This document shows, piece after piece, positions 38,274-62,016 of a stretch of 64,000 bases of DNA. The stretch's first letter is position 1; each line of letters opens with the position of its first letter. Made by a program: the position numbers and the translations under genes. The notes beneath the pieces were generated by a model that was not told the DNA's origin, did not search any database, and saw only the letters and a list, made by a program, of their open reading frames with translations. Where the stretch lies: the IMG/VR virus record IMGVR_UViG_3300049846_001037, positions 141,427-205,426 of that record. One strand, given 5' to 3'.

Positions 38274-38289
38274 TACTTAAATTTAAGTA
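38274..38289. repeat. intergenic palindrome copy 1
   Basis: TACTTAAATTTAAGTA. Confidence 0.9.
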
Positions 38290-39419
38290 AGCAGATGACC
38301 GGTCGCAGCAGATCCTCTGGATGTTCTCCCGTAAAGACAAAGACCCCGCCGAGGTTGGCAGGGTCTCTGTGGGTGGGACGAGGTGGGGTGGTTCTACTTG
38401 GTGAGGTATCCATGCTTGGGGAGGTCGGTGGGGAGAGGCATGGAGAGCAGGGCAGAGATGGAAGGAACCTTCATCTTGCAGGGAGAGTGGGCGAGGTAGT
38501 CATACTTCTTGAACGCCAGTTCCTTGCCGTGGTGAGGGCAGTCCACGTAGTCGAAAGTGTAACCCTTCTTCTTGAGTTCGGCATGGAACAGGTCGAAGTC
38601 CTTCTTCGCTTGCTTGATGGCGGGGTCGCTGGGGTTCTGCTTGATGAGTTCATTGATTTCGTCCATTGCCATTGCGATAGCATGGGCAGACATCTTGGAA
38701 GCGATTGCCTTCTTCTCTTTGATGGTCAGCATGGTTTGTCTCCGAGAAGTGATATCTTTAATGTAACTTAGATGAGGGTTCTTGTCAAGGCATATTTAGG
38801 TCTTTGAACAGGAAGTCTTTGGGGAGTTTCCTGCCGCCGAGGTGGTCGTAGATGATGAGGCAAGGCAGGGACATGATGCCAGGCACGACGAAGGAGTTGA
38901 TGAGGAGGGTCATGGGCATGGAGAAGTGAAGATGCTGGTAGCAGATGTTCCCCACAGCGAACCAGATGAGGAAGAGGACCATGAGGAAGATGCGTTGTTT
39001 GTTGTTCATGGTATTACTCCTGAGTGATGAGTAAAGTATAACAATAAAGATAGCACATGTCAAGGGGTTATCTGCCGTTGACATCGGTCCAGTAGTCATC
39101 ATCGCAACGCTCGTCCATGTTATTTCCCCCTCTTGTTGGCTTCATTGCGGAGTTTGGTCATGACTTCGAGGGCACGGGCAAGGATGGCGGCTTCGCTCTG
39201 ATGACCCAGCATGAAGACACCCAGCGAATGAACAGCATCCAACATCTCGTCATTGGGAATGGTGGGAATGCTTTGTTCCAGTTCCGCCAGCATCGCCATC
39301 TTCTCGTTGTAGACTTGGGTATCCATTGGGTTTCTCCTTAGTTGATAAAGTAATTATACTAATAAAGATAGCACATGTCAAGGGGGAGATGTTCGCCCGC
39401 TGCGAGGGAGGGGCGTTGT

Positions 39420-39435
39420 TACTTAAAGATAAGTA
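39420..39435. repeat. intergenic palindrome copy 2
   Basis: TACTTA-AAGA-TAAGTA. Confidence 0.9.
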
Positions 39436-40712
39436 AGGAGTGCAGGGCTGCAGGATCTGGCTGCGATGAGGTTGGCACAGCAAAAGACCTTCCGTGTTAG
39501 GGAAGGTCTTTGCGGGTCTTCTCTTTCTCTACCCTCTTGAGTATTTTGAGGGCGACTTGTTCTGCTTCTTCCAGCGTCATCAGAACCTTTTTCCTTACGT
39601 CATTCTTTTCTATCAGGCAGACATAAGGTTGTCGTAGACGTGGAAAGCGTATTTCTACTGTTTGTTTCTTTGGCATGGTGTCATCAGAGTGGGATGGAGA
39701 GTTCGTGGATGAGGACTTCGGTTCCGCTTTGGAGGAGGATGATATCTTCGTCGGTTCCTCCTCTTGCCACCTTGTCCCAGCGAGAGCAGGTGCCGTGGTC
39801 GGGGTCATGCCAGTAGACCACATCGCCACGCTTTACCCTGTCTGTGGATTTGAGGCGGCGTTTGGGGCATTTGGAGCAGGGACCATCTTCGCCCAGTTCG
39901 GACTGCTTGACTTTGTTGCCACAGAGCGAGCAGTATTCTTCGCCCTGAGGGTCATAGTTCCGTTTGTGGGGTTGCTTCTTGTCGGAGTTCATGTCTGCCT
40001 CAGAGGACGATGACTTCTTTCTCGTTGCGACCACCGAGGTAAGCGAAGACTTTGCTCTTATCAATCTTGATGGTCTTCACTTTGCCCTGTTTGCCAAAGC
40101 GATTAGCGAACCAAGTTGCTTTGGTCTTAGAGAGCGAGTAAGACATTCCGTTAGGGGATTTGTCGTAGCCCCGATGGATGGTGAGGAAGTCAGGGAGATT
40201 GGCGAGTTCAAGGCGGTCCTCATCGCTCATAAAGTATTCTTTGTTGGGGACTTGAGCCGTGAGGAGTTTCTTCCAGTCCTTGATGTTCTGCCAGATGTTC
40301 TCCGAGTCAATCCAGATGGAGCCGAGCAGACCCCAATAAGTCTTAGGCTCAGTAATGCGGTTGCGGATTTTGTTGAAAGCCCACAGACGATACGGACGCT
40401 CATGCCAGAAGACATAGGCATGGAAATCTCCTTCGGCAAGGCATTTGTCACACGCTTCCTGCTTCTGCTTCAACTGCTCGTTGTAGAGGGCGTTATGCTG
40501 AGGGGTGTAGAAGATTTCCTGCACCAAAGGATGCTGAATCGCCTGCCCGAAAGGTCCGTCCATCAGACAGACGTAGAGTTCGGGGGCGAGTTCTTCTTTA
40601 CGGGCGAGGACTTCCTGAAAGTTAATCATGTAGTAAGTATAACCTATTAAGCATAGCTTGTCAAGACGTGGGGCAAATAGACATGAGTGGCTGGTGATCC
40701 CTGGGAGCTAGT

Positions 40713-40728
40713 TACTTACATTTAAGTA
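40713..40728. repeat. intergenic palindrome copy 3
   Basis: TACTTA-CATT-TAAGTA. Confidence 0.9.
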
Positions 40729-42135
40729 GGAAGAGGAGGTGGCTGCAGATCCGGTCATCTGGGTGGTTGGCACAAGCAAAAGGGACTCCGATGTTTTGGA
40801 GTCCCTTTGGGTCTTAGTAGATTTCGAGTTCGTCTAGTTCTTGGGAAGTTGGGGTGGAGAATTCCTTGAGGGAGTAGCGTCTTCCTGAGTCTCTGGGCGG
40901 GTTCATGCCGCTTGTTTCTTGGACTCGGTTCCATGTGGCTATGAGTTGTTCGCCGTAGGGGCGGGACTCCACAAGGACTTTGAAAGTATTACCTTCGGAG
41001 GATTGAACAGTCATGGTCTGGAGGGTAGCGACAATGTATCCGCCTTCCCAGTTCCATGAATGATTCTTTGCTTTGGTCATCACTCTGCCCTTGCAGTCGA
41101 AGGAGTCGCCCTTGAAGAAGACGACGGCACCATGACGGGCTTTGATGCGTCGGACTTCGGTTGGTGTAACTTCCCTGTGTTTGCCTTGAGGGGGCAAAGG
41201 AAGTTCGAGGCAGTCGGGGTGGATGTTGAGTCCCATGACTATTTTCTCCTGCGGCGGCGATAAATCATTAGCAAAACTCCCCATCGAGGAAGAAGTTGCC
41301 TGATTGGTCGTTCCACTCATTCTCCCGTGATGCCCTCTGGAATTTGGCACCAATCTGTTTCCTGTCCCTGATGAGTTTGAGCAGGTCTACTGGGGTGGAG
41401 ACATCCGAGCCATTGTCGTTGGTGAGAGTATAACCTTCTTTTGCCAGCCGCTCAACACGGGCGTACCACGAGCGGACATCCACAACGCCGTTAGCCTTGT
41501 CGCCACGGAAGGTGAATTGCCAGCCTGCTGATGACTTGCCCAGATGAACGGGCTCACCAGAGACGAAGACTTCGGGAGTCATGTAGAAGTTCGTGCCCAT
41601 GTTCAGCCCTGAAAAGAGATGCCTTCGGGGTGGCTGTAGAGCGTTTCGCTCATCCAGCGTCCCATTCCCTTATACCGCTTGTCTTCGTCATCGACAAGGG
41701 CAAAAGAGGTCAGGACGTAGGACCACTTGTTGTTCATGAGGTTGCGGCTCTGCTCGTTCCACTTGGCGATGAGGGCTTCGCCAACCTTCTGGGAGACGAC
41801 GAGGATCTGCTCGTTGAAGGTCTCGTTGGTCGGGGTGTGGGTGTTGGTGTAGTTCATCAGGAGCATCTGCATGGCTTAGTCCTCCTCTTCCGCTTCGATG
41901 TCCACTTCGGGGTCTTCGAGCGTCAGATTGTTCTTGTTGACCTTCATCTTCTCCCACTTCTTCATGGCGTCCTTCTCGTTCTTGGCGGTGACGGTCACTT
42001 GTTCGGTGGCGAGGTAACGGACGGTGAGGTTGAAGGTCTTCATGGCGGTTCTCCTTGAGTGATGACTACATCATAGTCTAATAAAGCTAGCTTGTCAAGA
42101 CCGAGGTGAGCTGCGAGGGATCCCCGTGAGCTGTT

Positions 42136-42151
42136 TACTTAAAGATAAGTA
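42136..42151. repeat. intergenic palindrome copy 4
   Basis: TACTTA-AAGA-TAAGTA. Confidence 0.9.
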
Positions 42152-43294
42152 AGAAGATGTCCGGTCATCAGAAGTTGGTTGGTGGCACAAGCAAAAGCCC
42201 CGCCGTGTTAGGGCAGGGCTTTGCTTGGGATTACTGGGTTTTAGTAGGAGATGGACACATCGAAGTCGCCGTGTTCGTTGGTGGCTTCGAGGAGGGACTG
42301 GAGGGTTTCCTTGTCTTCGGGGTTGAGGTTGCGGAGGGTCTTGTTCAGTTCGTCCACTTTCTGCTTGGAGATGTAGTAGAGCCCGTTGTCGTTCATCGGG
42401 AAATGCTTCTCGATGAAGTCGGCGGAGGAGGAGCCGTTCAGCAGGCTGTGGTGTTCGATGCGATAGATGCTGACGGACATGGCGTTCTCCTTATCGGTGA
42501 ATGTTCATGGGAAGATTCTTCTTCAAGCGTTCATTGACCACCGCCGTCAAGAACACTTTCCCGAACCCTGACTTCGGGACCACCTTTTGTATCAGTTTCT
42601 TTTCTCCTTGCATGGTGATGAAGGTATCCACCTTGAAGTGTTCTTCCATTTTAGCCTTTGAGCCGTAGACTTCTACCACAGCCCCTTGCAGAACCTTGGT
42701 CAGTTCCTCATGCTTCTCATTGATAATATCACATTCCCTCTTATTAGGGAAGTTCTTCATGGGGAAGGAGATGCTATATTCTCCTTCGACAGAGTTAACA
42801 CCGCCAAAGAGGCGAAGGGACTTGCGGAAGATGAAGTCATCCAGTTTAGCCAGTTTGGATTCCAGCAGGTTGATGCCGTAGATGACGTAGGCGTTGGCGA
42901 TGGGCAACACGATGGAAAGCACCGCCGCCAGAGCCAAGCCCGAAGCCATCGCCGTCTTACCCATAGCAAGGGCGGCAAGGCAGAGGAACGAGAAGAAGAT
43001 GAAGGGGCTTCTCATGGCTTCACCTCATTGAAGGGAATGATTTCTGCCTTGATGTTCATTTCACCCAGTATTCTGATGATAATATCACATTCACTTTTTG
43101 GCAACGGGTTGATATCTTCAATAATAGTGCTAGGCTCCCCATCGAAGTCGTGGTAAGCAAAGGTGCCATCTTCGAGAGTGTAGCGTATCTGGAACATGGA
43201 GTTCTCCTTGAGTTAATGTAATTATATAAAATTAAAGATAGCTTGTCAATGGGGTTGGAGCAGGTGAGCTGGCTGGTGATCATGGGGAGCTGTT

Positions 43295-43310
43295 TACTTA
43301 CATTTAAGTA
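43295..43310. repeat. intergenic palindrome copy 5
   Basis: TACTTA-CATT-TAAGTA. Confidence 0.9.
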
Positions 43311-44364
43311 GGGAGGGAGCCCGCTGCAGATCTGCGAGTGGGTCGTCGTGAAAAGCAAAAGCCCCTCTAGAGTTCAGAGGGGCTTCGGCGTTTAAGGCTG
43401 GAGATGGTTTATTGCATGGAGGCGAAGGACTTCTGGAGGGCGAGTTTGAAGCATCGGCATTGTTCGGGGTCGAGGGAGAAGGCGAAATTGAGGCTGGGGT
43501 CTTCGAGGGCTATGCGGTTCTTCTCGGCGGCTGGCTTATCGCCAATGGTTGAGTAGTTGCTGTTCTCGTCCACGCACCACCAGAAGGTTTCGGGGTCGCT
43601 GGACTGGAAGGAACTCTCGTCCACGATGTCGCCCAGACGAATCCATTCCTTGAGGCGACGGGCACCGTTCTTGCCTTCGAGGTAAGCCCTGATGGCTTCG
43701 ACGGCTTCGCCCTGTTCGTTGTGGTCAGCGAGAACATGGATGGTGAAGTCATGCTTCTTGCTGTTGCGGAACTTGAAGGAAGTCTGGACCAGATTCTTCT
43801 GAGCCAACTTCCTGATGGACTTGGGGATGGCTCCGAACTCGAACTCGGCAGAGCCCATGTAGTCGAGGCTCATGTAGTCGGAGACCTTCTCACCTGCGTA
43901 GAACGTGACCTTGGGTTTGCATCGCTGGACGAGCCACATGGTCTACTCCTTTCCTTCGAGGATGATGTCTCCAGCCTTAGGCTTGCCGAAGTTTTGCTTC
44001 ATCGGCTTGCCCATGTTGCCACCGACACGGACGAAGATATCGTGGTCGGCATGATGGACTTCAATGACTGTGGCGGCATTGGTGTGGATACCGCCGTTCT
44101 TGCTGTGAGCCGCAACATCTCCCTGCCCATAGCGGAAATGGTCAGAGTGTTGGTAGGCGGCAACGTGTTGGATAGCGTCAGCCAGCTTCTTGCCGAACTC
44201 AGGGTCGTTCTTGATGGCATCGAGGGCATCCACCATCACAACCAACGTGGCATTGTATCCCATGACGTGTCTCCTTTGAGTGATGGAGTAAGTATAACTA
44301 ATTGGCCGATGCTTGTCAACGCATCTCCGCCTGCGAGCTGCTGGGGATCACCGGCTGCAGTGCT

Positions 44365-44380
44365 TACTTAAATTTAAGTA
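44365..44380. repeat. intergenic palindrome copy 6
   Basis: TACTTAAATTTAAGTA. Confidence 0.9.
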
Positions 44381-45478
44381 GGCGGCCGTCTTCCTCGCAG
44401 CGGGCTGGGACATCTCGGCGCAGCAAAAAGCCCACACCTGCTGGGGTATGGGCTTGCGGCAACAGACTGCTGGAGATGATTACTTCTTCAACGCCTTGTC
44501 AATCATCTCTTGGACTTCTTTGACTATTTTATCTTTGGCTGTCTTCTCAATGGTGGCTCGGAACATGGGACGAAGGGACTCACGCTCGTAGTCGCTCACC
44601 TTTAAGCCTGCGAGGATTTCGTCTTCCACTTTGCGTAGCGTAGGAATCATCTGTTCAAAGGTCTTGAGCATCTGAACACGCAGAAACTCATTGACCTGCT
44701 CAATTTGTTTATGAACAGATTCTTGTTCCATCTCTTTTAGTGTGTTGAGTAGGTCAGCCATTGGGCACCTTCATTGAAGCAAGACAATCTTTGCAGGTGA
44801 CTTTCTTCCAGTCAAAGGAAGATTGGGGGTCATCGTATTTCATGCCATCGTAGTCGCAGAGGATGTAGGATTCATCTTCTCCACTTGATTGGGAGCAGGT
44901 CTCTCCAGCGGCGGCATGCACGACCTTCATGGCTTCTGCTCCTTGTAGTTCACCATCTCTGCGATCTTTTTCAGGAGCTCATAGTTGTCCTGAACGCCCA
45001 CCACATTACCGAGGTAGTGAGCGTTAGCCTTGACCCACGCCTTGCGTTCCACTTCTTCCATTGAGAAGCAGACCCCACGCAGAGTTCCTTCACGCAGTTC
45101 CTTCTTGGAAATCTTGATGGGGTTGCGCCAGTCCTTGCCCACAATCCAAGACTGGGTGGTTTCCCCGTCAATGGTGTGAGGACGCCAATGTTCCTTCCAG
45201 ATGGGTCCGCCAGTTGAGCGACCCTGAGCATCTTTGGCGTAGACTCTGTGGTTGTCTTCGAAGATGTAGATGGTTGAGCCGATCATTTTTGACTCCTGAG
45301 ATATTCCTGATGCATCTTGCGAATGTGTTTGGTGTTTTGGCGTTTAGTATACAGCCCAGAAGCCACAAGGAAAAGGATGAAGACCAGCCATGTGATATCC
45401 ATTACTTGGCTCCTTTGAATTTCTTCTTGGCTTTCTTGTATTTGCGTAGGCGGCTCATGACACATCCTATAAGGGGGC

Positions 45479-45579
45479 GGTGAGAGACCGAACCCACTTT
45501 TAATGGCAGAGGGGCGGATTCGAACCGCTCTCCCTATCTCTAGGGCGACTTTCCATCGTCCATCTCTGGGGCTCTCACC
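45479..45579 (-). ncRNA. tRNA-like RNA lacking an anticodon loop, enclosed in an outer stem
   Basis: CAGAG-ATG-GAC GATGGAAA GTC-G-CCCTA GAGA TAGGG-AGA-GCGG TTCGAAT CCGC-CC-CTCTG-CCA (45568 to 45504). Outer stem GGTGAGAG/CTCTCACC. Directly downstream of the promoter at 45587-45615. Confidence 0.6.
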
Positions 45580-45663
45580 TGTCATCAGTATAACTTTCTG
45601 GGAGACCCTTGTCAATGACGCCAGCAGCTCTGGGGACGCCGCTGCTGATCCCCGGGAGCTGGT

Positions 45664-45679
45664 TACTTAAATTTAAGTA
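45664..45679. repeat. intergenic palindrome copy 7
   Basis: TACTTAAATTTAAGTA. Confidence 0.9.
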
Positions 45680-45769
45680 AGCCAGGACATCACGGGCTGC
45701 GGCGGAGATGTGGCGCAAAAATAAGCCCCCTTATTTTATATAAAACTATTAGATTATAAGGGGGTTCAC

Positions 45770-46273: not shown

Positions 46274-48021
46274 TTTTTACGTCAGCCAGGGCGGTTTCCT
46301 GCGGCGGTCTGTCCAAGTCCCAGAGGGCGGGAGAGACCTATGCGGCAGGAAAGGGGTTCAAGTCTCTATATTTGTTCATACAGCAGAGCGGGGCTAAACT
46401 TTATTTTCTTCTTGGCAAAATTACACCTTAGCCACTTATCATCTATGCGTGACCTTTCAGCCTTTTTCTTGCGATTCTTCATTGCCTTTTCAACAGCCTT
46501 ATTTCTTTGAGCAATATACTCATCTGTTAAAAAGACATCATCATCCCAGTTATTGATTCTCATGTTGCGCCTAGAAGATGCCCTTACGGGCGAAGGCTCG
46601 GCGTTCTGCCCTGTTGCGGGGGACTGGGGCATTGTGCAGGTTCGCCACCATGTTGCCCAGTTCACGTTGGACGGCTTCGCTCTTGCGCTTGAGGGTGTAG
46701 AGCGAGAAGGTGGTCTTGATGGCGTAGAGCAGTCGGCGGAAGAACTTCATGGCTTGCTCCTTTTCTTAGAGGCTTGCTTGCGGCTCTGGACCATGTGGTG
46801 AGCGTCCCGTAAGGCTGAGTTTATCTTGGCGAACATCGGGTCGTCAAGAGTAAACCCCATGCCGAAAAGCAATTCGACCAGTTTGCTTAACTTGGTGTGA
46901 AACTCAGCCAGTTCCTTGTCGGTAAGAGCCTGAGCCCTCATGTATTTGGCGTAGAGGTCGGTGAGTTTCATGGTTCGGTCAGCCCGTCAAAGGCTCCCTT
47001 CTTGATGCAGGCAGAGCAGTTGTCCTTGCCGTTGCGTGTGACCTTGCCGCAAGTCAGGCAGAGGTCTTGCGATCTGACGGGCGTGTAGACAGTCCCGCAA
47101 GAGGGGCACTCATCATCGCAGGTGGAGTCCCAGTCGCTCGTCCACTTCTCCCTGCACTTTTTGCAATGGTAGTGGTTGCGGAAACGCATGACTGCTTCTT
47201 CGTGGAGTGTGTTGCTCATGGCTTACCCCTTCACGTTGATGGGCAGGCGGGTGTAGGAGTAGCCCTTCGTGGTGAGTTCGAAGGCGTAGTGGACTTCCTT
47301 GATGGAGCAGATGAAGCCAAAGGGACGCTTGGTGGCTTTGACGAAGGTAGCCCCATGCTGTTCGACCAGAGGCTTCATCACGTTGCCGTAATCGTTGATG
47401 TTCTCGTAAGCCCTCTCGTCCATCCAACGGGAGTAGAGGTTGCAGAGGGCATCTTCCAGTTTCTTGGACTCGAAGATGGTCTTAGCCACCCTCTTGATGC
47501 CGTTGATGATGGTGTCGGTTTCGGCTGGGGTCATTTTGACCTTGAGCCAAGAGGGGCAGGGAGTAGGCTTGTGAGGCATGGCATTCTCCTTTGAGTTACC
47601 CCTATACTAAACCATTTACTTTAGCTTGTCAATAGACCCGCAAATCATTTTTGCTCATCAGGTCCATTTCTTGGGGCGTAGGCGTGACCTTTATACCTGC
47701 CATGCGTTCCCCCAGTAAGCCAGTATCCACACGCCAGCCTGCACATTCTTCTGCGATGTTCTGGGGTATCATCTGTTCGTTCTCACCGAACCTGTTGGCA
47801 TCATCGCATATCTTCTTGGCTTCTGTCTCGGTATACAGACCTGCCTGATGCAAGTCATTGGTATAGCCGTTGGAAGCAGGTCGCCACCAGCAGGCAATAC
47901 CCTTTGGATGTTCATGTTCAATTGACCTGATGTAGTAAAGCATTGGTTCCTCCAGTTGTTCCCAGTCTAACCTGCGGAAGTCACGTCGTCAAGCCCTCTG
48001 GGGATCAGGAGGGGGTGTTCC

Positions 48022-48037
48022 TACTTAAATTTAAGTA
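48022..48037. repeat. intergenic palindrome copy 8
   Basis: cc-TACTTAAATTTAAGTA-gg. Confidence 0.9.
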
Positions 48038-49550
48038 GGTACTGCAGAGCTGCAGGGCGGCACTGCAGGGCGCAAAGAAAAAGCCCCCGTGTTGCTGGGG
48101 GCTTATTCTTGGGAGCCTATCTTTTTCCAGTCCATTAGGGCTTGGCTATATCTGGGTTGTTCATCGTAATCATCATCGTAGTTATTTCCCCATTTGTTGC
48201 CCCTAACAGCCCCATCCACCTGCCTTAGCCGGTCACGCATTTGCCTATTCTCTTCTTGAAGGAAATGAAGAAGTTCCATCATCTCCTTAACCTTCTTTGG
48301 GGTGGTGGGAGGAACATGAGTCAACTCTTCCTCTAAGTCCCGAACAGTCTTCTCCAGTTCATCGACGGTATGTTCGTAGGTCTTTATTTCTTTATCCTTG
48401 TCATCGATCTCTTTCTGCATCTTGCCTTTCTCTTTTTCATGTTCAGAATCTTTTTCTTCTAACTTGTTCTCCAGAGAGGTGATGGTATCCCGTGCAGAAT
48501 CAAGTTCCTGTTCTAAGACAGGAACCTTTTCTGCTTCCTTCTTCAACTCCTCGTATGTGTGGAGATGGTCTAGAAGTCCCATTTACTTGAGGTGAGGGAA
48601 TTGTTCTTTCTCCCACTCCATCCCTTTCGTGAAGGCTCGGTGTATCCAGAAGAAGCAGATGCCAGCGATGAAGAATGGCAGGGTGATGGCTCTTGCGAAC
48701 TTCTCTCGGTTGCTCATTTCTTTTCTCCGATGATGGGAGGCAGGATGATGACCTTCTCACAGACCTTGGAGTAGGTATTGCCGCTCTTGCATCTCCAGAT
48801 GTTCAAGCAGCCCTCTGGCGTTCCCTCATAGCCGGTGCCGATGGCTTCGCAGTCATCCTCTCGGCCGTCCATGAAGGTGATGTGGAAATACTTGGGAGGC
48901 GTATCCTCACAGCCAGCCAAGAACCCCACGCAGAGGAGAGCAAGAAAAAGATTCTTCATCGGCTCACCTCGTAGTAGTTGCATTCATGTTCGTTGCAGGC
49001 TTGATGCTTGGGAGTCCAGATGAGTCCAAAGAGGTGAGGCTCGACCATCTGCCAGTTGTAGCGGGCATAGCCGACACGAGCTTCGGAACGGACGAAACGC
49101 ATCTTCTCACAGCCCAGTCCGATGGTGCCATAGAGTTTCGGAGCGATGTAGAACTTGGGGATGAAGAGGTAGAGGACCAGAGCCGCCAAGCCCCAGCCAG
49201 CCCAGTCGTTGATGAAGGTAGACACGGCTTCGGCATGGGGAATGGTGAGGCAGAGCAGGAGCGTGGTGCCGCCATAGAGGATCATCAGAAGGTCGTAGAT
49301 GTTGATGTAGCCATCCTTAGCCAGTCGCCCACGCAAGAGGCGATAGGTAGGACGAGCCAGCAGCACAGCAGAGAAGATGTAGAGCGGCAGGAGGCTTCTC
49401 ATGACTTCACCTCAAACTCTTTAGAGGAATAGGAGTAGTCGGGGTTCGTCTTCGTTGCTATGAACTTGTCAGCCGCTTCTTGGCTCAGGAAAATATCCTC
49501 CACCTCTGGAGACTCCCATGCCAAACAATGCTTGAAGACAACATAGACCT

Positions 49551-50590: not shown

Positions 50591-50714
50591 GGTATTCTCC
50601 TGAGTTATGAGCAAAGTATAACTAATTAATGATAGCTTGTCAAGAGGATTGTTATTGTATTTTTGTAAAGAGACTCCATCTGGGAGCCCTGGGATCCTAG
50701 CTCCCGTCGTAGGC

Positions 50715-50730
50715 TACTTAAAAATAAGTA
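50715..50730. repeat. intergenic palindrome copy 9
   Basis: TACTTA-AAAA-TAAGTA. Confidence 0.9.
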
Positions 50731-50833
50731 AGGGCAGCAGGTGGCAGCGGGCGGAGGTGGCAGGCTGCTCTGGGCGCAAAGAAAAAGCCCTCCGTTTCCA
50801 GAGGGCTTCTTCTTGCTTGGGTTGGCGAGGGTG

Positions 50834-51034
50834 TTAGTGGCGGCGGAGGTTCATGCCGAGCCGCTTCATGGCGACCAGGAGCGGGACGTACTTGAGGTTG
50901 GAGCCGTTCTTGCTGTTGACGCTCTTGAGGACCGCCTTGAGGCTCTTGGTGGGCGTGACCATCGCCACCAGCTTCTGGATGCGCTCCTTGGTGTAGATGG
51001 CGGGGCGACCACGCTTGCTCGTCTGCTTCTTCAT
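50834..51034 (-). CDS. small basic DNA-binding protein (AT-hook-like KRGRP plus helical domain)
   Basis: MKKQTSKRGRPAIYTKERIQ...YVPLLVAMKRLG; has its own promoter and terminator. Confidence 0.5.
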   Translation of the reverse strand: MKKQTSKRGRPAIYTKERIQKLVAMVTPTKSLKAVLKSVNSKNGSNLKYVPLLVAMKRLGMNLRRH

Positions 51035-53215: not shown

Positions 53216-53658
53216 GGGGTTTCCATCCTTTCAGCCGCTTGGTGCAATCGGAGTTCCAGCCCAGTTCCCGCCAAGCCTTGCGGCAGGACTCAACACGGGT
53301 CATCCCCTGCTTCTCGTACTTGAAGGCGAGTTCGTTGCATTGACGCAGACGCATCAGGCGGGTGTATTCCTTCTCCCCAATGCGGCGGCGAAAGGCTTTC
53401 TCGGTCTGTTGGCTCTGGTATTCGCCCCAAGAGAGTCCCGTCTTCTTCTCGAAGTCCTTGTGGGACTGGTCCAGAGCCTTCTCAGCCAACTTAACAGCGT
53501 CAAGCAGGTCATAATACTTCTTGGCGGCGGTGTGGACGTTGGCTTTGGCGGACTTGAGGATTTGGGCTTTGGTGGACATGGGCTTCTCCCTTGAGTTGAA
53601 CCCATGATAAACTAATTCCCTGAACTTGTCAACGCCCGCTGCGAGGAGGTGGCTCGTT

Positions 53659-53674
53659 TACTTAAATTTAAGTA
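53659..53674. repeat. intergenic palindrome copy 10
   Basis: TACTTAAATTTAAGTA. Confidence 0.9.
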
Positions 53675-54040
53675 GTCTTCAGGATCCTGCAGAGCTCTGC
53701 AGCTGCAGCCTTAAGCAAGAAACCCCATCAAGCTTTCTGATGGGGTTCTCGTGGGAATCTGCTGATGTCTATTCGTTCTGGTGTGTGGCTGGGACTATAT
53801 CGTTCTTGTTTCTTGTAGAGCCTATTTGCAGGTATCCCGTATTTCCTGCCCTCGAACATTACCCTACACCAGTCTTTATCTTTCTGGGTGAACACCGCAA
53901 CAACTTCTACTTTCCTGACTGGGGGAGAGCTAAGTCTTTTGTCCCCATCTACGAAGGCATAGTCGGTGTAGGCTATGCTGGACTTCTCTGCCGAGGGTTT
54001 GTTGTGGTGGGTCAGTTTAATGAACCCCGGCACTTTGTCT

Positions 54041-54811: not shown

Positions 54812-54907
54812 AGTGGGGTCATTGTATTACATCTGGCTGGTTCGTCAAGTGGCCAATTTTACAAAAGGGGCTTGCTCGCTGGTGGTTTTGATGGCTCGCT
54901 ACCGATT

Positions 54908-54923
54908 TACTTAAATTTAAGTA
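54908..54923. repeat. intergenic palindrome copy 11
   Basis: TACTTAAATTTAAGTA. Confidence 0.9.
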
Positions 54924-55127: not shown

Positions 55128-55370
55128 TTAGGCTACTACGGCTTCTGGCTTCTTAGCCGCATTTGCCTTTTTAATTTCGGCGTATTTCTTGGGTATCTTC
55201 AACCCATAACGCCTGATGGCTCGATTGATGGAGACATAGGGCCATTTATGACCGCCTTCCATCTTCTCGGTCTTCTCTCGGCATTGCTCCTTGATGGGCT
55301 TGCCAAGAGTCTCCTTAATTCTTATCATTTCCTTGATGTCATCTTCCGTGTAACATATGGGGCGAGGCAT
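55128..55370 (-). CDS. small basic DNA-binding protein, apparent paralog of 50834-51034
   Basis: MPRPICYTEDDI...YVSINRAIRRYGL. Confidence 0.45.
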   Translation of the reverse strand: MPRPICYTEDDIKEMIRIKETLGKPIKEQCREKTEKMEGGHKWPYVSINRAIRRYGLKIPKKYAEIKKANAAKKPEAVVA

Positions 55371-56958: not shown

Positions 56959-56968
56959 GGCTGGCTCC

Positions 56969-57505
56969 TCAGATGAACTTCACCTTGATGGCGACGATGT
57001 TGCCCTTGGCGTCTTCACGGGTGTAGGCGGTGTAGGAGCCATCGCCGTAACCGCTGCTCGACACGGCTCCGTGAGGCATGACGCCACCGTGGTTCTCGTG
57101 GTTGGGGTCTTCCTCGTTGCCGCAGGTGAGGGAGCAGGCGGCAGCGTAGAAGGGAGCCCCGCCATCCTTGTCCTTGTCCTTCGCCATCTTCTCCCATTGC
57201 TTGGTGATCTTGCCCACCGACTCCGAAGCCTTGCGGTAGAACTTGTCATCGAAGATGGACATCTGACCGCTGTCCACGCCGCAGTCGATGTTGAGGGCGA
57301 TCCACTTGTCGGCAGGCTTCGCCTTGGCGTGGGTCACGACCAGGCTGGCGACACGTCCCTCACGGTTGAGGTTGGCGGTAGCCTTCCACTCGCCCTTGAG
57401 GACGCCGCTGACGGTACCGGCGCAGATGGTGCCCTTCTCGTAGCAAGGGTCGGAGATGCGGACTTTGCCGGTCTCGATGGTGAAGGTTCCGATGGACTTC
57501 TTCAT
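56969..57505 (-). CDS. DUF4241-like protein
   Basis: GKVRISDPCY, GVDSGQMSIFD and SSGYGDGSY motifs. Confidence 0.55.
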   Translation of the reverse strand: MKKSIGTFTIETGKVRISDPCYEKGTICAGTVSGVLKGEWKATANLNREGRVASLVVTHAKAKPADKWIALNIDCGVDSGQMSIFDDKFYRKASESVGKITKQWEKMAKDKDKDGGAPFYAAACSLTCGNEEDPNHENHGGVMPHGAVSSSGYGDGSYTAYTREDAKGNIVAIKVKFI

Positions 57506-59044
57506 GGTCTACTCCTGAGAAAAGTCGATGCTGATGTTCTTGATGTTGCGGAACGCCTTCCACAAGGCATTCTCCTGCTTCTCGACCATCTCACGGGAGC
57601 CACGCAGAGTCAACCCCAGATTGATGTCGTAGGTGCGGTTCTTCGTCTGCTGGAAGTTGAAGCCCCCACCCGTGACCCTGAACTTCTTGGGGAACCCCTT
57701 GGGCAGACGGCTGTTGACCCGCTCACGAGCCTTCTGCTCGAAGGTCTCGTCATCGAAACGCTGTTCGAAAGGGATCTTGATGGTGACATCCACGATGGTC
57801 TTCATGGCTTACTCTCCCTCAGGATGCAGGAACTCTTGGATGTCGTCCGCCTTCCAGTCGCCCTGCTTCTTAGCCCTGATGCGGAATGCCTTCTCGTTGA
57901 GACGTTGGTTGCTGACGGGCATGGAGACCCCAGTCAGGGAAGTCCTCTCAGCGAAGCCCTCGTTCATCTCCGCCACAGCATCATCCAGCGTGATGGTCTT
58001 GGGTATGGGCTTGGTGGAGAGGATTTCCACCTGAACGACGGTCCTGTAGAAAGCCATGTCAGACTCCGGAGAAGGGCTTGCAACGGGTGACTCTGGTCAG
58101 TTTTCTGCCACCAGTCAACTCGGTGATGAGTTCGACTTCACCCTCTAAGGAGTGAGTGGAACCGAACTGAGGAACTGAGGCGTGGGACTTCAAGGAGCGA
58201 GTCCACACGAAGATGTTGCCTTCACGGTCTTCGAACATGAGGGTGTAGTTGTGGGCATTCACAGCCCCTCGTGTCTCCTTGACGTAGACCACCTTACCCG
58301 TGAAGATTGCCTTCATGGCTACACCAGAGAGCAGGCAACACGGTGGGCGGCCAGCAAGTCGGCAGCACCCTCATCGCCATCACCGTTGGTGTAATCGTAC
58401 TTCTTCTCCAGGTTCTTGGACCATTGGCGGTAGAACGCCATGTCGGGCAGGTCATCGTGTCCCGTGAAGCAGGTCTCGTCGTCATCAGCGCCAGGGCAGG
58501 TCGAGAGCAGTTCCACCTCAGGCTTTTCCTCCTGCCCCAGCTCCCAGCCCATCTGCTTGAGCAAACGGACCATCTCGTTGGCGACCACGGTCTCGTTCTT
58601 GCTGAGTTTGTAGATGACCTGCATGGCTTCCTCCTGCTCTTGAGTTGACTCCATACTAACTTAAAGAGTACTACTTGTCAAGCCACCACGGTCAGCCCCC
58701 GCTTCATCTGCTTCTCCCACTCATCCGAATAGGCTTTGGGACGCAACAGGTTCTTTTGCTTGGGATGACCATTGCGATAAGCCCAACGGCAGACATTCTC
58801 AGCATAGTTGCGACCATTACGCCTGACACCCATCTTCCCCAGAAACTTCTCCTCAGCATGTCGAGGGTTCTTGGCTCGTAGGGGCTTATGAGTCCAACAG
58901 CACATGTCGCTGTGGATGATGGCGAAGACATAGTAACGGGGCATGGGGTTCTCCAAGTGATGTCTTAGTATAACTTCCCAGCAGCCACTCGTCAACCGTC
59001 GGCCGCAGCCAACTGCCGTCGTTGGGATCTGGGAGCCCCTTGTC

Positions 59045-59060
59045 TACTTAAATTTAAGTA
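59045..59060. repeat. intergenic palindrome copy 12
   Basis: TACTTAAATTTAAGTA. Confidence 0.9.
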
Positions 59061-59462
59061 AGCGCCGATGTCCGGTCGTTGGGCGATGAGCTCTACCCAG
59101 AAAACAGAAAAGCCCCACCCTTTCGGATGAGGCTCTTCTGTGCACCCGGCGTACCACCCTATGCTGATCCATGGGTCATAGGGAACCCGTCTTACACTTA
59201 ATACCGATGCTTGATGGCGGCGAATTGGGCGAAGGTGAGGGTAGGCTTGATGCCCTTCAACTGGCAGTAAGCCTTCCACAACTCTCTGTCGCAGGTGTAT
59301 TCGCCAGGAGTCGGCTCACACTCGATGTTGTCGATGAACTGAGCCGCTGTGTGGGAGTCGATGTCCTCCACACGCTCGAAGCCCCAGATGTCTTTGAGGT
59401 AATTGCGGCTCTCCCTCGAAAGGGGAAAAGCCGTCTTGAGGGTGGCGGACATCTTTGACTCC

Positions 59463-59561
59463 TTAGTGGTTGAAGTGCTGTACCACCGCTGCCCCGATGA
59501 CGAACAGGATGGCGATGACGATGACCAGTTCGACCAAGGTGAAGCCTCGTTGGTTACGCAT
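59463..59561 (-). CDS. 32-aa mini type IV prepilin (class III signal peptide plus hydrophobic helix only)
   Basis: MRNQRG/FTLVELVIVIAILFVIGAAVVQHFNH*; GAGG RBS; below the length cutoff of the ORF track. Confidence 0.8.
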   Translation of the reverse strand: MRNQRGFTLVELVIVIAILFVIGAAVVQHFNH

Positions 59562-60950
59562 GACTACCTCGAAGGGGAACGATGGACTTGCTGACGCCAG
59601 ATGTGGGCGGTGATGGTTCGGTCAGCCTCCATCTTCTTGTCCAGAAGCTTGTTGTACTTCCTCCGTCCATAGGCTTGGGCGGCGATGAGCTTGCGGCAGA
59701 GAGCAGCCAGCCTCTTGACATTGCGAGGCGTAGGGTTCTTGAGAGCCGCTTGGATGACTGCCTCTTGCTGCGTCATGTCCGACTCCTACTAGATGAGCTT
59801 CTTGCGGCGGAGTTTGGTCCGCAGGTTCTTGAGAGCCTTGATCTGGTTGCGGAGCTGAACGCCCTCCAGGCTGTGACCCAGATCGTGGATGCTGACGTTC
59901 TGGAGGTAGGTCTTGTACTTCTTCTCCAAGACCTTGATCTCTTCGTTGATGACATCGCTCACACGGAGTCCCATGACTTACCTCAAGAGGGATTGGAGTT
60001 GCGTCATTTCCTCGGTCAGAGTTTCATGGCGGCGTTTGGGACTGTTCCAAGAATCAAGATAGTCCCTGTCCACCAGAGCCGCAGCAGCATCCTTGACGGC
60101 TCGTTGGATATGCTTCTGAGGAACCTCAACCTTCATCTTGAGAAGGTCCAAGACCACACCAACCAAGACAGTTGGATTGTAGTCGTTTGCCTTGATCTTG
60201 TCAAGCGCCCTGCTCAGGTTGTTCTCAGTCAGAGATGCCCTGTTGCGACGGAAGTAGTCCATCTCGTCTTGGACATCATCGCAGGCAGTGCTCTGTTCGC
60301 CCCAGGCTCCCATGACTTACCTCAGATGCTTCGGTTGGCGGTTGACCCACTTCTGCCATTGAGCGAAGGTCATGTCCGCAGGCAGGTTGTGGAAGGCGAG
60401 GTACTTCTCGGTGATGCTGTGGTCATCGGGCCAGACTTCCTTGGGCTCCTCTTCACGGTTCTCGATGAAGAGCGCCACCCAGCCCAGAGGCAACTGGCTG
60501 ATGTCCTTGATGCCCTTGGGCTCCCCATCGTACATCTGCTTGATGTACTTGATCTCCGATGGGGTCAGCGTGGTCGTCACCTTGTTGCGAGAGTGGAGCT
60601 GCTTCTTGAAGGCTTCGATCTGAGCCTTCTTCTTCTTGGCGTCTTTCCGCAGATGCTTGACGGTCTTCCGCAGCTCGTCCATGATCTGACCAGCGAGGTC
60701 ATCGTCGGGCTTGGCAATGTGGACAGCGTGGTTTTGGTGAGGCATGGCGTTCCTCCTTGATGTTGAACCCATCATAAACCAAACGCCTTAACTTGTCAAT
60801 AGTAGCCCTTCAGCCTAATGAGAGACCAGCGAAGTTTATATAGATTGGTGAGGGCTTCATCAATGGTCTTGATGAACACAGGGCATCCAGCAGTCCTCTT
60901 GAGTCTCTGCATCTTCGTTATCTCTTTGCTGACGATTTCTCCATTGGCTG

Positions 60951-61571
60951 TCATTTGACCTCCAATGCCCTGACCTTCTTTGCGATGACTTTATGCATCC
61001 CAGGGTTGATGAGCAGAGCCTCTGGAACAATGCCATGTCGAACCCTATTACGAGCATGACCCATATCCTCGTTGGTCATGTCCTCAGTCCAAGGAACATG
61101 CTTGTTCTCGGCATAGATGATCAGGTCAGATTTTGTGGTAAGGAGGAAAGGACGGACGACATTCTTATTGCGGTAGGGGATGAGTTTGGGAACCCCATGA
61201 CAGGCACCCATCAGCCATGTCTCAATCTGGTCATCGAGATGATGGGCGGTGATGACTGGGACTTCAAGGCTATGGAAAAACTTGTAGCGTTCATCTCGCC
61301 AGTATTCTTCCCAAGACTTGCTCTTAGGCTTGTCCGAAGAAATCCTCTGAGCAATCATCCCAGTCAGTCCCATCTGGGTGAGGAAGTCCAGAGCCTTGGC
61401 GGAAGTCTCAGTGCCGTGGTCAAAGAAGACAGGGGCAATACGCCGCTTGCCATTGACCCCATGCTTGAGGAAGTGATAGACGGCCATGGAGTCTACGCCA
61501 CCAGAGACGGCAACGTAATGCAACTGGTCATATTGAGGAAGGCTTCCGAGAATCTTTAGCATAGCGCCCAC
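60951..61571 (-). CDS. tilS: tRNA(Ile)-lysidine synthase, catalytic domain only
   Basis: PP-loop AVSGGVDS, RDERY, TAHHLDDQIET, RPFL, EDMTN, RNRVRH. Confidence 0.85.
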   Translation of the reverse strand: MGAMLKILGSLPQYDQLHYVAVSGGVDSMAVYHFLKHGVNGKRRIAPVFFDHGTETSAKALDFLTQMGLTGMIAQRISSDKPKSKSWEEYWRDERYKFFHSLEVPVITAHHLDDQIETWLMGACHGVPKLIPYRNKNVVRPFLLTTKSDLIIYAENKHVPWTEDMTNEDMGHARNRVRHGIVPEALLINPGMHKVIAKKVRALEVK

Positions 61572-62000
61572 ACCGTCCTGTCTGCCCGCATCTCCACCAA
61601 CCTAGCCCTCTCAGCCTTCTCGTTGGTGTCAGCGAAGTAGAAGTGGTCAGCCTTGTAAGGGTTGTACTTCACCTGCCGCAGTTTGGCTTCGGAGCTCAAC
61701 ACTACACCAAACTCAGGTATCTTGCCAATGACGAAGGCGTGGACATTCTTACGCTTCTGCTCAAGGACTCGCTTATGCCCACCCGGACGAACACGGAATT
61801 CCACATTCGTCACAACCACAGACTTCTCATGCCCCACAACCTTGCCCCCAACCATCAGAGACCAGATGGACTTATGCAGGTTGTAGTAGATGTAGGTCTT
61901 CATGTCGTCCTCCTTGAGATGGGTTAATATAACTTAAGGAGAAAGACATGTCAAACTCCTATCTGCGATCCTGCAGGGACATGGCACCACCTCCTTTCTC

Positions 62001-62016
62001 TACTTAAATTTAAGTA
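62001..62016. repeat. intergenic palindrome copy 13
   Basis: TACTTAAATTTAAGTA. Confidence 0.9.

What the first reader, a model, noticed from the sequence alone, without database searches (positions are those of the whole stretch)
38274..62016. Thirteen-copy element: terminator / GC arm / TACTTA-N4-TAAGTA / GC arm / sigma70 promoter, partitioning the early region
Seen: 13 intergenic copies at 38274, 39420, 40713, 42136, 43295, 44365, 45664, 48022, 50715, 53659, 54908, 59045 and 62001. The 6-bp arms are invariant; the 4-bp centre varies (AATT x8, AAGA x2, CATT x2, AAAA x1). I saw no copy in 1-38 kb or inside genes. Each lies about 36-47 bp from the terminator of the preceding unit (copy 11 about 145 bp; at copy 7 the hairpin is the one before the HNH gene). 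Twelve of 13 lie upstream of a TTGACA/TTGACG promoter. The flanks are GC-rich and reuse short words (CTGCAG, GATC, GAGCTG, CCGGTC, CGCCCGCTGCGAGG), which can appear on either side in inverted form (copy 2 left resembles copy 6 right). Spacing is 1.07-1.42 kb for the first seven copies and mostly wider afterwards. Known analogues: dimeric HTH operators, parS-type centromeres, REP/BIME gyrase sites, and promoter/stem-loop cassettes that shuffle genes in T4-like phages. Inference: a dedicated protein-DNA system that switches on, insulates or anchors the early region, or cassette borders for gene exchange. I do not recognise the motif.
Basis: partly seen in the sequence, partly recalled or inferred. 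Interest (0 to 1): 0.85.

Follow-up and report, generated by a model that had tools for sequence, protein, structure and literature searches.

The report
Conserved palindrome between phage early operons
An uncultured freshwater jumbo phage and its relatives carry the same exact 16-18 bp palindrome in the untranscribed gap between the terminator of one early operon and the promoter of the next, which most likely is the docking site of a phage-encoded dimeric protein that controls or insulates the whole early region.

Summary
There are 13 exact TACTTA-N4-TAAGTA copies at the stated coordinates, against 0 expected, and none elsewhere in the window even with 3 mismatches. The genes run on the minus strand. 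Each copy lies 42-52 bp after an intrinsic terminator (12 of 13) and 26-71 bp before a near-consensus sigma70 promoter (12 of 13).

Metagenomic relatives sharing 30-84% protein identity have the same layout and the same invariant arms: 42 copies in 8 loci, at orthologous junctions, with diverged spacers. One sister lineage carries TACTTG-TATA-CAAGTA throughout, a symmetric change in both arms. This pattern indicates a site read by a co-evolving homodimeric protein.

The "GC arms" do not pair with each other and are AT-rich in a 27% GC relative. The roughly 100-bp module is absent from some junctions, and about half of the strong promoter-like matches, mostly inside operons, lack it. Whole operons are gained or lost between neighbouring cores.

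Best reading: a shared operator or boundary site added to PeSL-like terminator/promoter cassettes. The binding protein is not identified. Two small paralogous three-helix proteins are weak candidates. Whether the site represses, insulates or promotes recombination cannot be decided from sequence.

The parts
38274..38289 (.). core c1, TACTTAAATTTAAGTA. Last copy of the array, with no promoter after it.
39420..39435 (.). core c2 (centre AAGA on the + strand)
40713..40728 (.). core c3 (centre CATT)
42136..42151 (.). core c4 (centre AAGA)
43295..43310 (.). core c5 (centre CATT)
44365..44380 (.). core c6 (centre AATT)
45664..45679 (.). core c7 (centre AATT)
48022..48037 (.). core c8 (centre AATT)
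50715..50730 (.). core c9 (centre AAAA)
53659..53674 (.). core c10 (centre AATT)
54908..54923 (.). core c11 (centre AATT). No clear terminator within 110 bp upstream.
59045..59060 (.). core c12 (centre AATT)
62001..62016 (.). core c13 (centre AATT). The whole ~100-bp module is absent at the orthologous junction of relative L206.
38338..38369 (-). intrinsic terminator hairpin before c1 (stem end 48 bp from the core)
39484..39510 (-). terminator before c2 (48 bp)
40779..40808 (-). terminator before c3 (50 bp)
42194..42222 (-). terminator before c4 (42 bp)
43358..43386 (-). terminator before c5 (47 bp)
44428..44455 (-). terminator before c6 (47 bp)
45726..45764 (-). hairpin plus T-tract before c7 (46 bp; 9-bp stem, 21-nt loop)
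48081..48104 (-). terminator before c8 (43 bp)
50783..50810 (-). terminator before c9 (52 bp)
53720..53748 (-). terminator before c10 (45 bp)
59107..59138 (-). terminator before c12 (46 bp)
62062..62093 (-). terminator before c13 (45 bp)
39353..39381 (-). promoter after c2, TTGACA-17-TATAAT (38 bp from core to -35)
40636..40664 (-). promoter after c3, TTGACA-17-TATACT (48 bp)
42070..42098 (-). promoter after c4, TTGACA-17-TATGAT (37 bp)
43221..43249 (-). promoter after c5, TTGACA-17-TATAAT (45 bp)
44291..44319 (-). promoter after c6, TTGACA-17-TATACT (45 bp)
45587..45615 (-). promoter after c7, TTGACA-17-TATACT (48 bp)
47964..47992 (-). promoter after c8, TTGACG-17-TAGACT (29 bp)
50615..50643 (-). 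promoter after c9, TTGACA-17-TATACT (71 bp)
53604..53632 (-). promoter after c10, TTGACA-17-TATCAT (26 bp)
54821..54848 (-). promoter after c11, TTGACG-16-TACAAT (59 bp)
58967..58995 (-). promoter after c12, TTGACG-17-TATACT (49 bp)
61926..61954 (-). promoter after c13, TTGACA-17-TATATT (46 bp)
50834..51034 (-). candidate binder only: 66-aa, pI 11.8 protein with an RGRP..YT motif and a predicted three-helix bundle. It is the last gene before c9.
   Evidence: pLDDT 80; no significant fold match
55128..55370 (-). candidate binder only: 80-aa paralogue of the 66-aa protein. It is the last gene before c11.
   Evidence: Atlas leads to resolvase/transposase-type HTH, below the reliable score; hhalign 88%, E 3e-6

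Best explanation
The 16-bp palindrome, which extends to 18 bp as T-TACTTA-WWTW-TAAGTA-A, is the recognition site of a sequence-specific homodimeric DNA-binding protein. That protein is most likely encoded by the phage lineage itself.

The sites lie in the only stretches of the early region that are not transcribed: the gap after an intrinsic terminator and before the next sigma70 promoter. A protein bound there would not be swept off by RNA polymerase.

From these 13 positions the protein most likely acts on the whole 24-kb block of strong host-type promoters. It could shut the block off by acting upstream of the promoters or by spreading or sliding along the DNA. It could also act as a boundary that keeps one operon's transcription from running into the next.

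The underlying terminator/promoter unit is a PeSL-like cassette. The palindrome with its two spacers is a roughly 100-bp optional insert in that cassette.

Shown here: the anatomy, the conservation, the symmetric change in a sister lineage, the presence/absence of the module, and the restriction to the promoter-dense region.

Inferred: that a protein binds, that it is phage-encoded, that its effect is on transcription, and the direction of that effect.
For: - Chance is excluded: 13 copies against 0 expected.
- All copies sit between a terminator and a promoter on the coding strand.
- Across relatives with 30-84% protein identity, 42 copies in 8 loci have invariant arms, with T at -1 and A at +1.
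- At orthologous junctions the terminator, core, -35 and -10 are conserved. The spacers are not.
- Lineage L270 has the same layout with TACTTG-TATA-CAAGTA: 5 exact copies plus 7 with one outermost mismatch. This is a concerted, symmetric change of both half-sites in all copies.
- The 10-bp centre-to-centre spacing of the half-sites and the AT-rich centre fit a dimer on one face of the helix.
- The core-to-(-35) distances show weak 10.5-11 bp phasing (Rayleigh p 0.007-0.01 in the window, 0.02-0.05 over all copies).
- Sigma70-like promoters are enriched only in 37-64 kb (34 found against 12 expected, and 9 against 3.5). They are at chance level in 18-38 kb (22 against 22).
- The 18-mer is not a widespread bacterial operator. 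A scan of 185,579 genomes gave 58 scattered single hits.
- Relatives range from 27% to 52% GC, which argues against one host factor.
- Two conserved small basic three-helix paralogues are encoded in the early region.
Against: - No binding protein is identified. Pfam and PHROGs find no HTH in the window (and the precomputed Pfam lists). Fold searches of both candidates are not significant.
- About 14 strong promoter-like matches in 38-64 kb lack the site.
- Some terminator/promoter junctions lack it, in the window at about 63.7 kb and in L206 at the c13 junction. It is therefore not required by any single promoter.
- The promoters are already near consensus, so activation seems unnecessary. A site centred at -70 to -115 does not occlude RNA polymerase.
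- The site is tied more tightly to the terminator (47 +/- 2.7 bp) than to the promoter (45 +/- 12 bp).
- The total absence of degenerate copies in the window-type lineages is unusual for a transcription-factor operator set.
- The remaining 141 kb of the genome could not be read.
Confidence: 0.55

Rival explanations
1. The site is a recombination site at cassette borders. It would be either a short invariant patch for homologous exchange, as in PeSLs of T4-like phages, or the target of a dedicated recombinase. It would let whole early operons be inserted, deleted or swapped between co-infecting relatives.
For: - Operon-level gains and losses between the window, L206, L207, L201, L188, L163 and L270 are bounded by cores.
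- An extra 338-aa gene unit in L206 is flanked by two cores.
- The module itself is cleanly present or absent.
- The window-type lineages have no decayed copies. The sister lineage L270 has seven copies with one outermost mismatch.
- The layout of 6-bp arms around a 4-bp centre resembles recombinase core sites (my own knowledge).
- PeSL cassettes are known to work this way (PMC2839356, PMC4122927).
- The candidate proteins give weak leads to resolvase/transposase-type HTH domains.
Against: - No recombinase is seen in the window.
- Any unit that carries its own promoter and terminator would show indels at its borders whether or not the palindrome is involved.
- 16-18 bp is short for homologous exchange, and the promoters (about 30 bp alike) already offer longer homology.
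- The concerted arm change in L270 points to a trans-acting reader, although a recombinase would also be one.
Confidence: 0.15
2. The sites are loading sites for a ParB/KorB-like clamp, or a dispersed centromere. A CTP-dependent clamp would load at the palindromes and slide to silence the region. Alternatively, an adaptor would tie this DNA to the phage tubulin filament for positioning.
For: - The site is a 16-bp exact palindrome in many identical copies, like parS and OB.
- KorB operators lie 4-10 bp or 45 to over 1000 bp upstream of their promoters (PMC11790492). Here the distance is 26-71 bp.
- Silencing by spreading would also cover the promoters that have no site.
- The phage encodes a tubulin homologue.
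- An unrelated Saprospiraceae plasmid-like contig has four copies of the same palindrome around parA and a small RHH-like gene.
Against: - No ParB-family or TubR-like gene is detected in the 64 kb read.
- There is no sequence likeness to parS or OB.
- A centromere does not need to sit at every operon border or to be confined to the early region.
- The plasmid's proteins have no homologue in the window.
Confidence: 0.1
3. The site is bound by a host factor, such as a global regulator, a nucleoid protein or a type II topoisomerase, that the phage exploits downstream of its heavily transcribed units.
For: - The site sits just after strong transcription units, where positive supercoils build up.
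- The 4-bp centre between symmetric arms matches the 4-bp stagger of type IIA topoisomerases (my own knowledge).
- No phage-encoded binder has been found.
Against: - The arms are invariant across phages of 27-52% GC, which presumably infect different hosts.
- One lineage switched both arms in concert.
- The flanks show no 10.5-bp composition periodicity.
- The motif shows no enrichment or conserved context in 185,579 bacterial and archaeal genomes.
- Gyrase sites are degenerate, not exact.
Confidence: 0.08
4. The signal is a structure in DNA or RNA: a hairpin promoter for a virion RNA polymerase as in N4-like phages, a cruciform, or an RNA stem-loop in read-through transcripts.
For: - The core can form a 6-bp stem with a 4-nt loop.
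- The L270 change (A-T to G-C) keeps the pairing.
- Centre position 9 and the promoter-side flank are polar.
Against: - If pairing alone mattered, copies would drift independently with compensatory changes. Instead every copy in a genome is identical.
- The stem is short and AT-rich, and the flanks do not extend it (z-scores mostly near 0).
- The site lies downstream of terminators, so it is rarely transcribed.
- The last copy (c1) is followed by terminators, not genes.
- No RNA polymerase gene is seen in the window.
Confidence: 0.05
5. The element is a selfish miniature mobile element (MITE-like) that has spread among intergenic gaps.
For: The roughly 100-bp module is present or absent at orthologous junctions. 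Words are reused in either orientation.
Against: - Comparison of filled and empty sites shows no terminal inverted repeats or target-site duplication.
- The spacers are not conserved among copies.
- The core is kept exact across deeply diverged phages.
- Placement is strictly 42-52 bp after terminators.
Confidence: 0.03

Closest known systems
PeSL (promoter-early stem-loop) cassettes of T4-like phages (PMC2839356, PMC4122927)
   Same: Both are short composite intergenic units with a strong sigma70-like promoter and a stem-loop terminator. Both are repeated many times in a region of small orphan genes. In both, insertions, deletions and replacements between related phages are bounded by the units.
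   Different: This phage is not T4-like. Here most junctions carry an extra ~100-bp insert with an invariant 16-18 bp palindrome at a fixed distance from the terminator. PeSLs have no such element. Junctions without the insert (window ~63.7 kb; L206 ~1470) look like plain PeSLs. Recombination at these sites was not tested.
KorB operators (OB) of plasmid RK2 (PMC11790492)
   Same: Both are 16-bp palindromic sites present in many identical copies. Both lie upstream of the promoters they would control, at tens of bp or further. Both would serve one global regulator of many operons.
   Different: There is no sequence likeness. No ParB-family gene is found in the 64 kb read. The sites here are tied to terminators and to a phage early region. 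Sliding or spreading is untested.
Stoperators of Cluster A mycobacteriophages (PMC9283540, PMC6550527)
   Same: Both are more than twenty copies (here 13) of one short site in short intergenic gaps of a phage genome. Both would be read by one phage protein that acts on transcription. Specificity differs between lineages in both.
   Different: Stoperators are asymmetric 13-mers bound by a monomer. They depend on orientation, are spread over the whole genome of temperate phages, and lie in the path of transcription. The present site is a palindrome in untranscribed gaps of one region of a jumbo phage.
REP/BIME elements of enterobacteria
   Same: Both are repeated extragenic palindromes located after operons.
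   Different: REPs are GC-rich imperfect palindromes of 35-40 bp that fold and are transcribed (my own knowledge). Here the palindrome is AT-rich and 16 bp long, the flanks do not pair, and the site lies beyond the terminator.

Membership tests
PeSL-type composite terminator/promoter cassette | Strong sigma70-like promoter and terminator stem-loop combined in one short intergenic unit | tested here: met
   12 of 13 copies have a hairpin plus T-tract, and 12 of 13 have TTGAC(A/G)-16/17-TAnnnT.
PeSL-type composite terminator/promoter cassette | Many copies in a region of small orphan genes, with indels between relatives bounded by the units | tested here: met
   About 75 mostly unannotated small genes lie in 38-64 kb. 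Unit gains and losses fall at the junctions.
PeSL-type composite terminator/promoter cassette | Recombination between units (mini-circles, chimeric junctions) | not testable with these tools
   This needs inverse PCR or long reads. Laying contigs of four other samples showed no joints, but coverage was fragmentary.
PeSL-type composite terminator/promoter cassette | Occurs in T4-like myoviruses and is homologous to their PeSLs | tested here: not met
   There is no DNA match to any deposited phage, and protein matches are only distant and to unrelated phages. The relation is analogy, not membership.
KorB OB / ParB parS sites | 16-bp palindrome in several near-identical copies on one replicon | tested here: met
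KorB OB / ParB parS sites | Cognate ParB-family CTPase encoded by the replicon | tested here: inconclusive
   No ParB-like Pfam family appears among the called genes of window 1-64 kb. The other 141 kb of the contig were not readable.
KorB OB / ParB parS sites | Sequence related to parS (TGTTNCACGTGAAACA) or OB (TTTAGCSGCTAAA) | tested here: not met
   The core is TACTTAAATTTAAGTA. The OB sequence is taken from PMC11790492. The parS consensus is from my own knowledge.
Stoperators (Cluster A mycobacteriophages) | Asymmetric 13-mer with orientation linked to the direction of transcription | tested here: not met
   The site is a perfect palindrome in its 12 arm positions. Only the centre and one flank are polar.
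Stoperators (Cluster A mycobacteriophages) | Sites distributed across the genome within transcribed intergenic gaps | tested here: not met
   The sites are confined to 38-62 kb and lie after terminators.
REP/BIME | GC-rich imperfect palindrome that folds into a stable stem-loop | tested here: not met
   Only the 6-bp AT-rich core pairs. In 12 of 13 elements the z-score of the fold lies between +0.4 and -2.7.
MITE | Terminal inverted repeats and target-site duplication | tested here: not met
   The filled site (window c13) was compared with the empty site (L206 ~1470).
N4-type hairpin promoters | Hairpin with a 5-7 bp stem and 3-nt loop directly upstream of early genes, plus a virion RNA polymerase | tested here: inconclusive
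   The stem is 6 bp, but the loop is 4 nt. A sigma70 promoter follows each copy and c1 precedes no gene. No RNA polymerase gene is in the window. The family's features are from my own knowledge.

The most novel reading that the evidence does not exclude
The palindrome with its fixed-distance flanking words is the DNA part of a dedicated phage boundary system. A lineage-specific protein would occupy every untranscribed gap of the early region. It would divide the region into insulated domains or silence it from a distance, in the manner of a clamp or an insulator. The same sites would serve as the joints at which whole operons are exchanged between phages. This would be a bacteriophage counterpart of insulators combined with integron-like cassette borders.
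Probability: 0.18. Interest if true: 0.8.

Novelty: new variant of a known kind. Interest (0 to 1): 0.58.

Why it matters
Control of early transcription in jumbo phages that rely on the host polymerase is poorly understood. Most models come from a few cultured phages.

This is a clean regulatory signal that can be footprinted by comparing genomes. It is shared by a whole uncultured freshwater phage lineage. A natural specificity switch (TACTTA/TAAGTA against TACTTG/CAAGTA) could be used to find and prove the binding protein.

If the protein silences or insulates a 24-kb block from sites upstream of promoters, it adds a phage example to the few known cases of long-range or boundary-type regulation in bacteria. 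If the sites are joints for exchange, they extend the PeSL idea beyond T4-like phages.

The compact terminator / operator / strong-promoter unit could also serve as a part for synthetic circuits.

Tried and rejected
- Near-identity search of deposited phages: no match.
- Protein searches of deposited phages with five window proteins: only distant or unrelated hits, or none.
- Protein-based locus searches in IMG/VR returned only the source contig.
- Laying contigs of four other freshwater samples on 40.5-46.4 kb gave only short fragments. It showed no joints and no pile-ups of ends, so nothing can be said about nicks or circles. One fragment carried a core with unrelated flanks.
- Folding of the 13 elements showed no arm-to-arm pairing.
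- The flanks show no 10.5-bp composition periodicity. This speaks against a gyrase-wrapping signal.
- The genome-wide scan for the 18-mer gave scattered chance hits, with no host operator family.
- Proteins of the Saprospiraceae plasmid and of the 152-kb phage that also carry the palindrome have no homologue in the window or its relatives.
- Pfam and PHROGs scans of about 50 window proteins found no DNA-binding domain in the early region.
- Fold searches of the two candidate proteins were not significant. A profile search against solved structures found nothing.
- Rfam found nothing at the two possible non-coding RNAs.
- Literature searches for the motif found nothing.

Full report
**1. Observation**

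A pattern search finds exactly 13 copies of TACTTA-N4-TAAGTA at the coordinates given. None is expected in 100 shuffles that preserve dinucleotide content. The centres are AATT x8, AAGA x2, CATT x2 and AAAA x1. Allowing three mismatches to the commonest form adds nothing. There are therefore no decayed copies and no copy in 1-38 kb. All copies lie between called genes.

**2. Source**

The window is the last 64 kb of a 205,426-bp contig from a freshwater sediment metagenome (JGI Ga0499941_000003 = IMGVR_UViG_3300049846_001037). Window position 64000 is the contig end.

The contig is a jumbo phage with no cultured relative. The region 1-38 kb encodes:
- a DnaB-like helicase and a DnaC-like loader;
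- an SNF2-type helicase;
- two AAA+ ATPases;
- a tubulin homologue, a NusG-like protein and a DnaJ.

An exact scan of IMG/VR finds the AATT-centred core in this contig only at the eight window positions.

**3. Anatomy**

Genes in 38-64 kb are on the minus strand. Read in the direction of transcription, each element has this order:
- a GC-stem hairpin followed by a T-tract that usually ends in ...TTTGC(T)TGYGCC;
- a spacer;
- the core;
- a second spacer;
- TTGAC(A/G), then 16-17 bp, then TAnnnT;
- AAGGAG;
- ATG.

The end of the hairpin stem lies 42-52 bp before the core in 12 of 13 copies. That group of 12 includes copy 7, which has its own hairpin with a 21-nt loop. Copy 11 has no convincing terminator nearby.

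The gap from the core to the -35 element is 26-71 bp (mean 45 +/- 12). It shows a weak 10.5-11 bp periodicity, with Rayleigh p 0.007-0.01 for the window and 0.02-0.05 for all loci. These values are not corrected for the periods scanned. Copy 1 ends the array and is followed by more terminators, not by a promoter.

Sigma70-type consensus matches are enriched only in this region: 34 found against 12.3 expected in 37-57 kb, and 9 against 3.5 in 56.5-64 kb. In 18-38 kb the count is 22 against 22.4 expected. This is the basis for calling the region the early region. It is an inference from sequence, not from expression data.

**4. What the element is not**

The two "GC arms" do not pair with each other. 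Folded as single strands, 12 of 13 elements have z-scores between +0.4 and -2.7, and only the 6-bp core stem recurs. The flanks show no helical periodicity in composition.

The element is not attached to promoters as such. About 14 further strong promoter-like matches on the coding strand of 38-64 kb have no core. Most of them lie inside operons without an upstream terminator.

It is also not present at every junction. At about 63.7 kb the T-tract of a terminator runs almost directly into TTGACA. The promoters of the tRNA genes and of a non-coding unit at 62.4 kb also lack it.

**5. Relatives**

A composite pattern scan of public metagenome contigs and two protein look-ups recovered related phage fragments from other samples:

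| Locus | Cores found | Note |
|---|---|---|
| L206 | 9 in 20.7 kb | from a 90-kb contig |
| L207 / L208 | 9 in 11.5 kb | |
| L163 / L204 | 3 / 1 | |
| L201 / L188 | 3 / 2 | |
| L190 | 2 | 27% GC |
| L270 | variant core | from a 50-kb contig |

Their genes are 30-84% identical in protein to window genes and are largely syntenic. All show the layout terminator, spacer, core, spacer, promoter.

Across 42 copies the twelve arm positions never vary. The base before the core is mostly T and the base after it mostly A. The centre is A/T-rich. Its third base, read in the direction of transcription, is always T, while the symmetric partner of that base varies.

Alignments of orthologous junctions show conserved terminator hairpins, T-tracts, cores, -35 and -10 elements. 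The spacers are unalignable but of similar length. In L190 the flanks are AT-rich, so GC-rich arms are not a defining feature.

**6. A natural specificity switch**

L270 is the most distant syntenic relative. It has no TACTTA..TAAGTA copy. Instead it has five copies of TACTTGTATACAAGTA and seven more with one mismatch at an outermost base. These sit in the same position between terminator and promoter.

Both half-sites changed (A to G, and T to C), and every copy in the genome changed together. Independent hairpins would drift separately. A concerted, symmetric change is what a homodimeric reader with altered specificity predicts.

Two further points argue for a phage-encoded reader over a host factor:
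- the lineages span 27-52% GC;
- the 18-mer has no conserved context in 185,579 bacterial and archaeal genomes.

This is inference, not proof.

**7. The module is optional and the units are mobile**

At the junction orthologous to copy 13, L206 has the terminator T-tract abutting TTGACA. The window therefore carries a roughly 101-bp insert there: spacer, core and spacer. The insert has no terminal repeats and no target duplication.

Between relatives, whole units are present or absent. Examples are an extra 338-aa gene flanked by two cores in L206, three novel small units in L207, and the absence of the c6-c5 unit from L206. Some genes also sit in different units.

This matches the behaviour described for PeSL cassettes of T4-like phages (PMC2839356, PMC4122927). 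It would also be expected of any self-contained transcription unit.

**8. Unexplained fine structure**

Short palindromic words sit at fixed distances from the dyad:
- GATC is centred 23-25 bp away on the promoter side in 7 of 13 window copies, 4 of 9 in L206 and 4 of 9 in L207.
- CTGCAG is centred 23-25 bp away on the terminator side in five window copies.
- CGCTGCGAG lies exactly 25.5 bp from the dyad. It is on the terminator side in window c6, L206 and L270, and is mirrored on the promoter side in window c2 and c10.

On the promoter side, many copies read AACAGCTCAC-N3-GATCAC. This is two or three G(A/C)TC(A/C)C repeats about 10 bp apart, and it never appears on the other side.

These words are lineage-specific and are absent from L201, L188 and L190. 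They suggest a larger nucleoprotein complex or a second factor.

**9. Candidate readers**

No gene of the window carries a recognised DNA-binding domain (and the precomputed Pfam lists).

Two small basic proteins are paralogues of each other (hhalign probability 88%, E 3e-6):
- the 66-aa protein at 50834-51034, with an RGRP..YT motif;
- the 80-aa protein at 55128-55370.

The 66-aa family was found in L206, L207, L188 and L270, and the 80-aa family in L206, L201 and L270.

The 66-aa protein is predicted as a three-helix bundle with pLDDT 80. The 80-aa protein gives four helices at pLDDT 69.

The Atlas search of the 80-aa protein gives leads to resolvase/transposase-type HTH families, but below the score that can be trusted. 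Fold and sequence searches against solved structures are not significant. These proteins are leads only.

**10. Mechanism**

The best-supported reading is a protein recognition site placed in the only untranscribed DNA of the early region. That placement explains three observations:
- the site follows terminators;
- promoters inside operons lack it;
- the array ends with a copy that has no promoter.

From there the protein could act on transcription of the whole block. The options are shut-off from upstream positions on one face of the helix, spreading or sliding as shown for KorB (PMC11790492), or a barrier to read-through. I put 0.55 on this family of transcription-control and boundary models. 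The rivals are:

| Rival reading | Confidence |
|---|---|
| Recombination joint | 0.15 |
| ParB/KorB-like clamp or centromere | 0.10 |
| Host factor, including topoisomerase | 0.08 |
| DNA/RNA structure or hairpin promoter | 0.05 |
| Selfish miniature element | 0.03 |

**11. Comparison with known systems, and novelty**

The terminator/promoter unit works like a PeSL cassette. It is not homologous to PeSLs, and it carries an extra invariant palindrome that they lack.

The site set works like KorB operators or mycobacteriophage stoperators (PMC9283540), but it fails their defining features wherever these could be tested. There is no sequence likeness and no ParB gene in the DNA read. The site is palindromic where stoperators are asymmetric, and untranscribed where stoperators are transcribed. 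REP/BIME, MITE and N4-type hairpin promoters do not fit.

The motif was not found in the literature searched. I rate it a new variant of a known kind, of moderate to good interest. A concrete experiment is suggested by the natural specificity switch.

Noticed in passing
window 45480-45590 (-): A structured, tRNA-like RNA candidate with a GGTTCGAATCC T-arm and paired ends GGTGAGAG/CTCTCACC lies directly after the c7 promoter. ARAGORN does not call it, and Rfam gives only tRNA-Sec at E 0.67. It is conserved in L207 (after core 3883) and in L188 (before core 1765).
   Followed up: partly
window 62140-62400 (-); L206 1130-1470: A stretch of about 270 nt without an ORF has its own promoter (62409-62382) and terminator (62093-62062). 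It is conserved in relative L206 and matches no Rfam family. It may be a new non-coding RNA.
   Followed up: partly
A homologue lies elsewhere and in the other orientation in L188. L206 and L207 have no gene at this junction. It looks like a mobile insertion.
   Followed up: partly
window 9471-16190 (-): A cluster of unusual phage genes: NusG-like (9471-10016), tubulin homologue (10032-11327), DnaJ (11361-12353), ClpX-like AAA+ (13126-14391) and a second AAA+ ATPase (14394-16190).
   Followed up: no
window ~38000: GC skew changes sign at 38 kb, from about -0.2 to +0.17, although the coding strand stays the same. The early-region mRNAs are C-rich.
   Followed up: no
window 63076-63170 (-): ARAGORN calls a 95-nt tRNA-Pro(CGG) next to tRNA-Met. 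It is over-long, and Rfam does not report it at the gathering score. It may have an insertion or be a miscall.
   Followed up: no
L228 1490-3100 (uncultured Saprospiraceae MAG contig): Four copies of TACTTA-N4-TAAGTA, plus half-sites, surround a parA gene, a 98-aa RHH-like gene and a large Rep-like gene. This looks like a plasmid centromere or operator with the same palindrome. Its proteins have no homologue in the window.
   Followed up: partly
L027 2006 and 7319 (= L055, L007, L032; IMGVR_UViG_3300042937_001586, 152 kb): An unrelated large phage has two exact copies of the 16-mer 5,313 bp apart. One of them sits within a 26-bp perfect palindrome. It shares no proteins with the window.
   Followed up: partly
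L241, L257, L268 (Clostridia/Oscillospiraceae MAGs): The same 18-mer lies about 25 bp upstream of a conserved promoter-like sequence in three gut Clostridia genomes. It may be an unrelated host operator.
   Followed up: no
window 40000-40629 (-): The 209-aa early protein is 42-45% identical to hypothetical proteins of Mycobacterium phages such as Archie and Faith1, and matches phrog_4776 at E 1e-63. It is a gene shared with otherwise unrelated phages.
   Followed up: no
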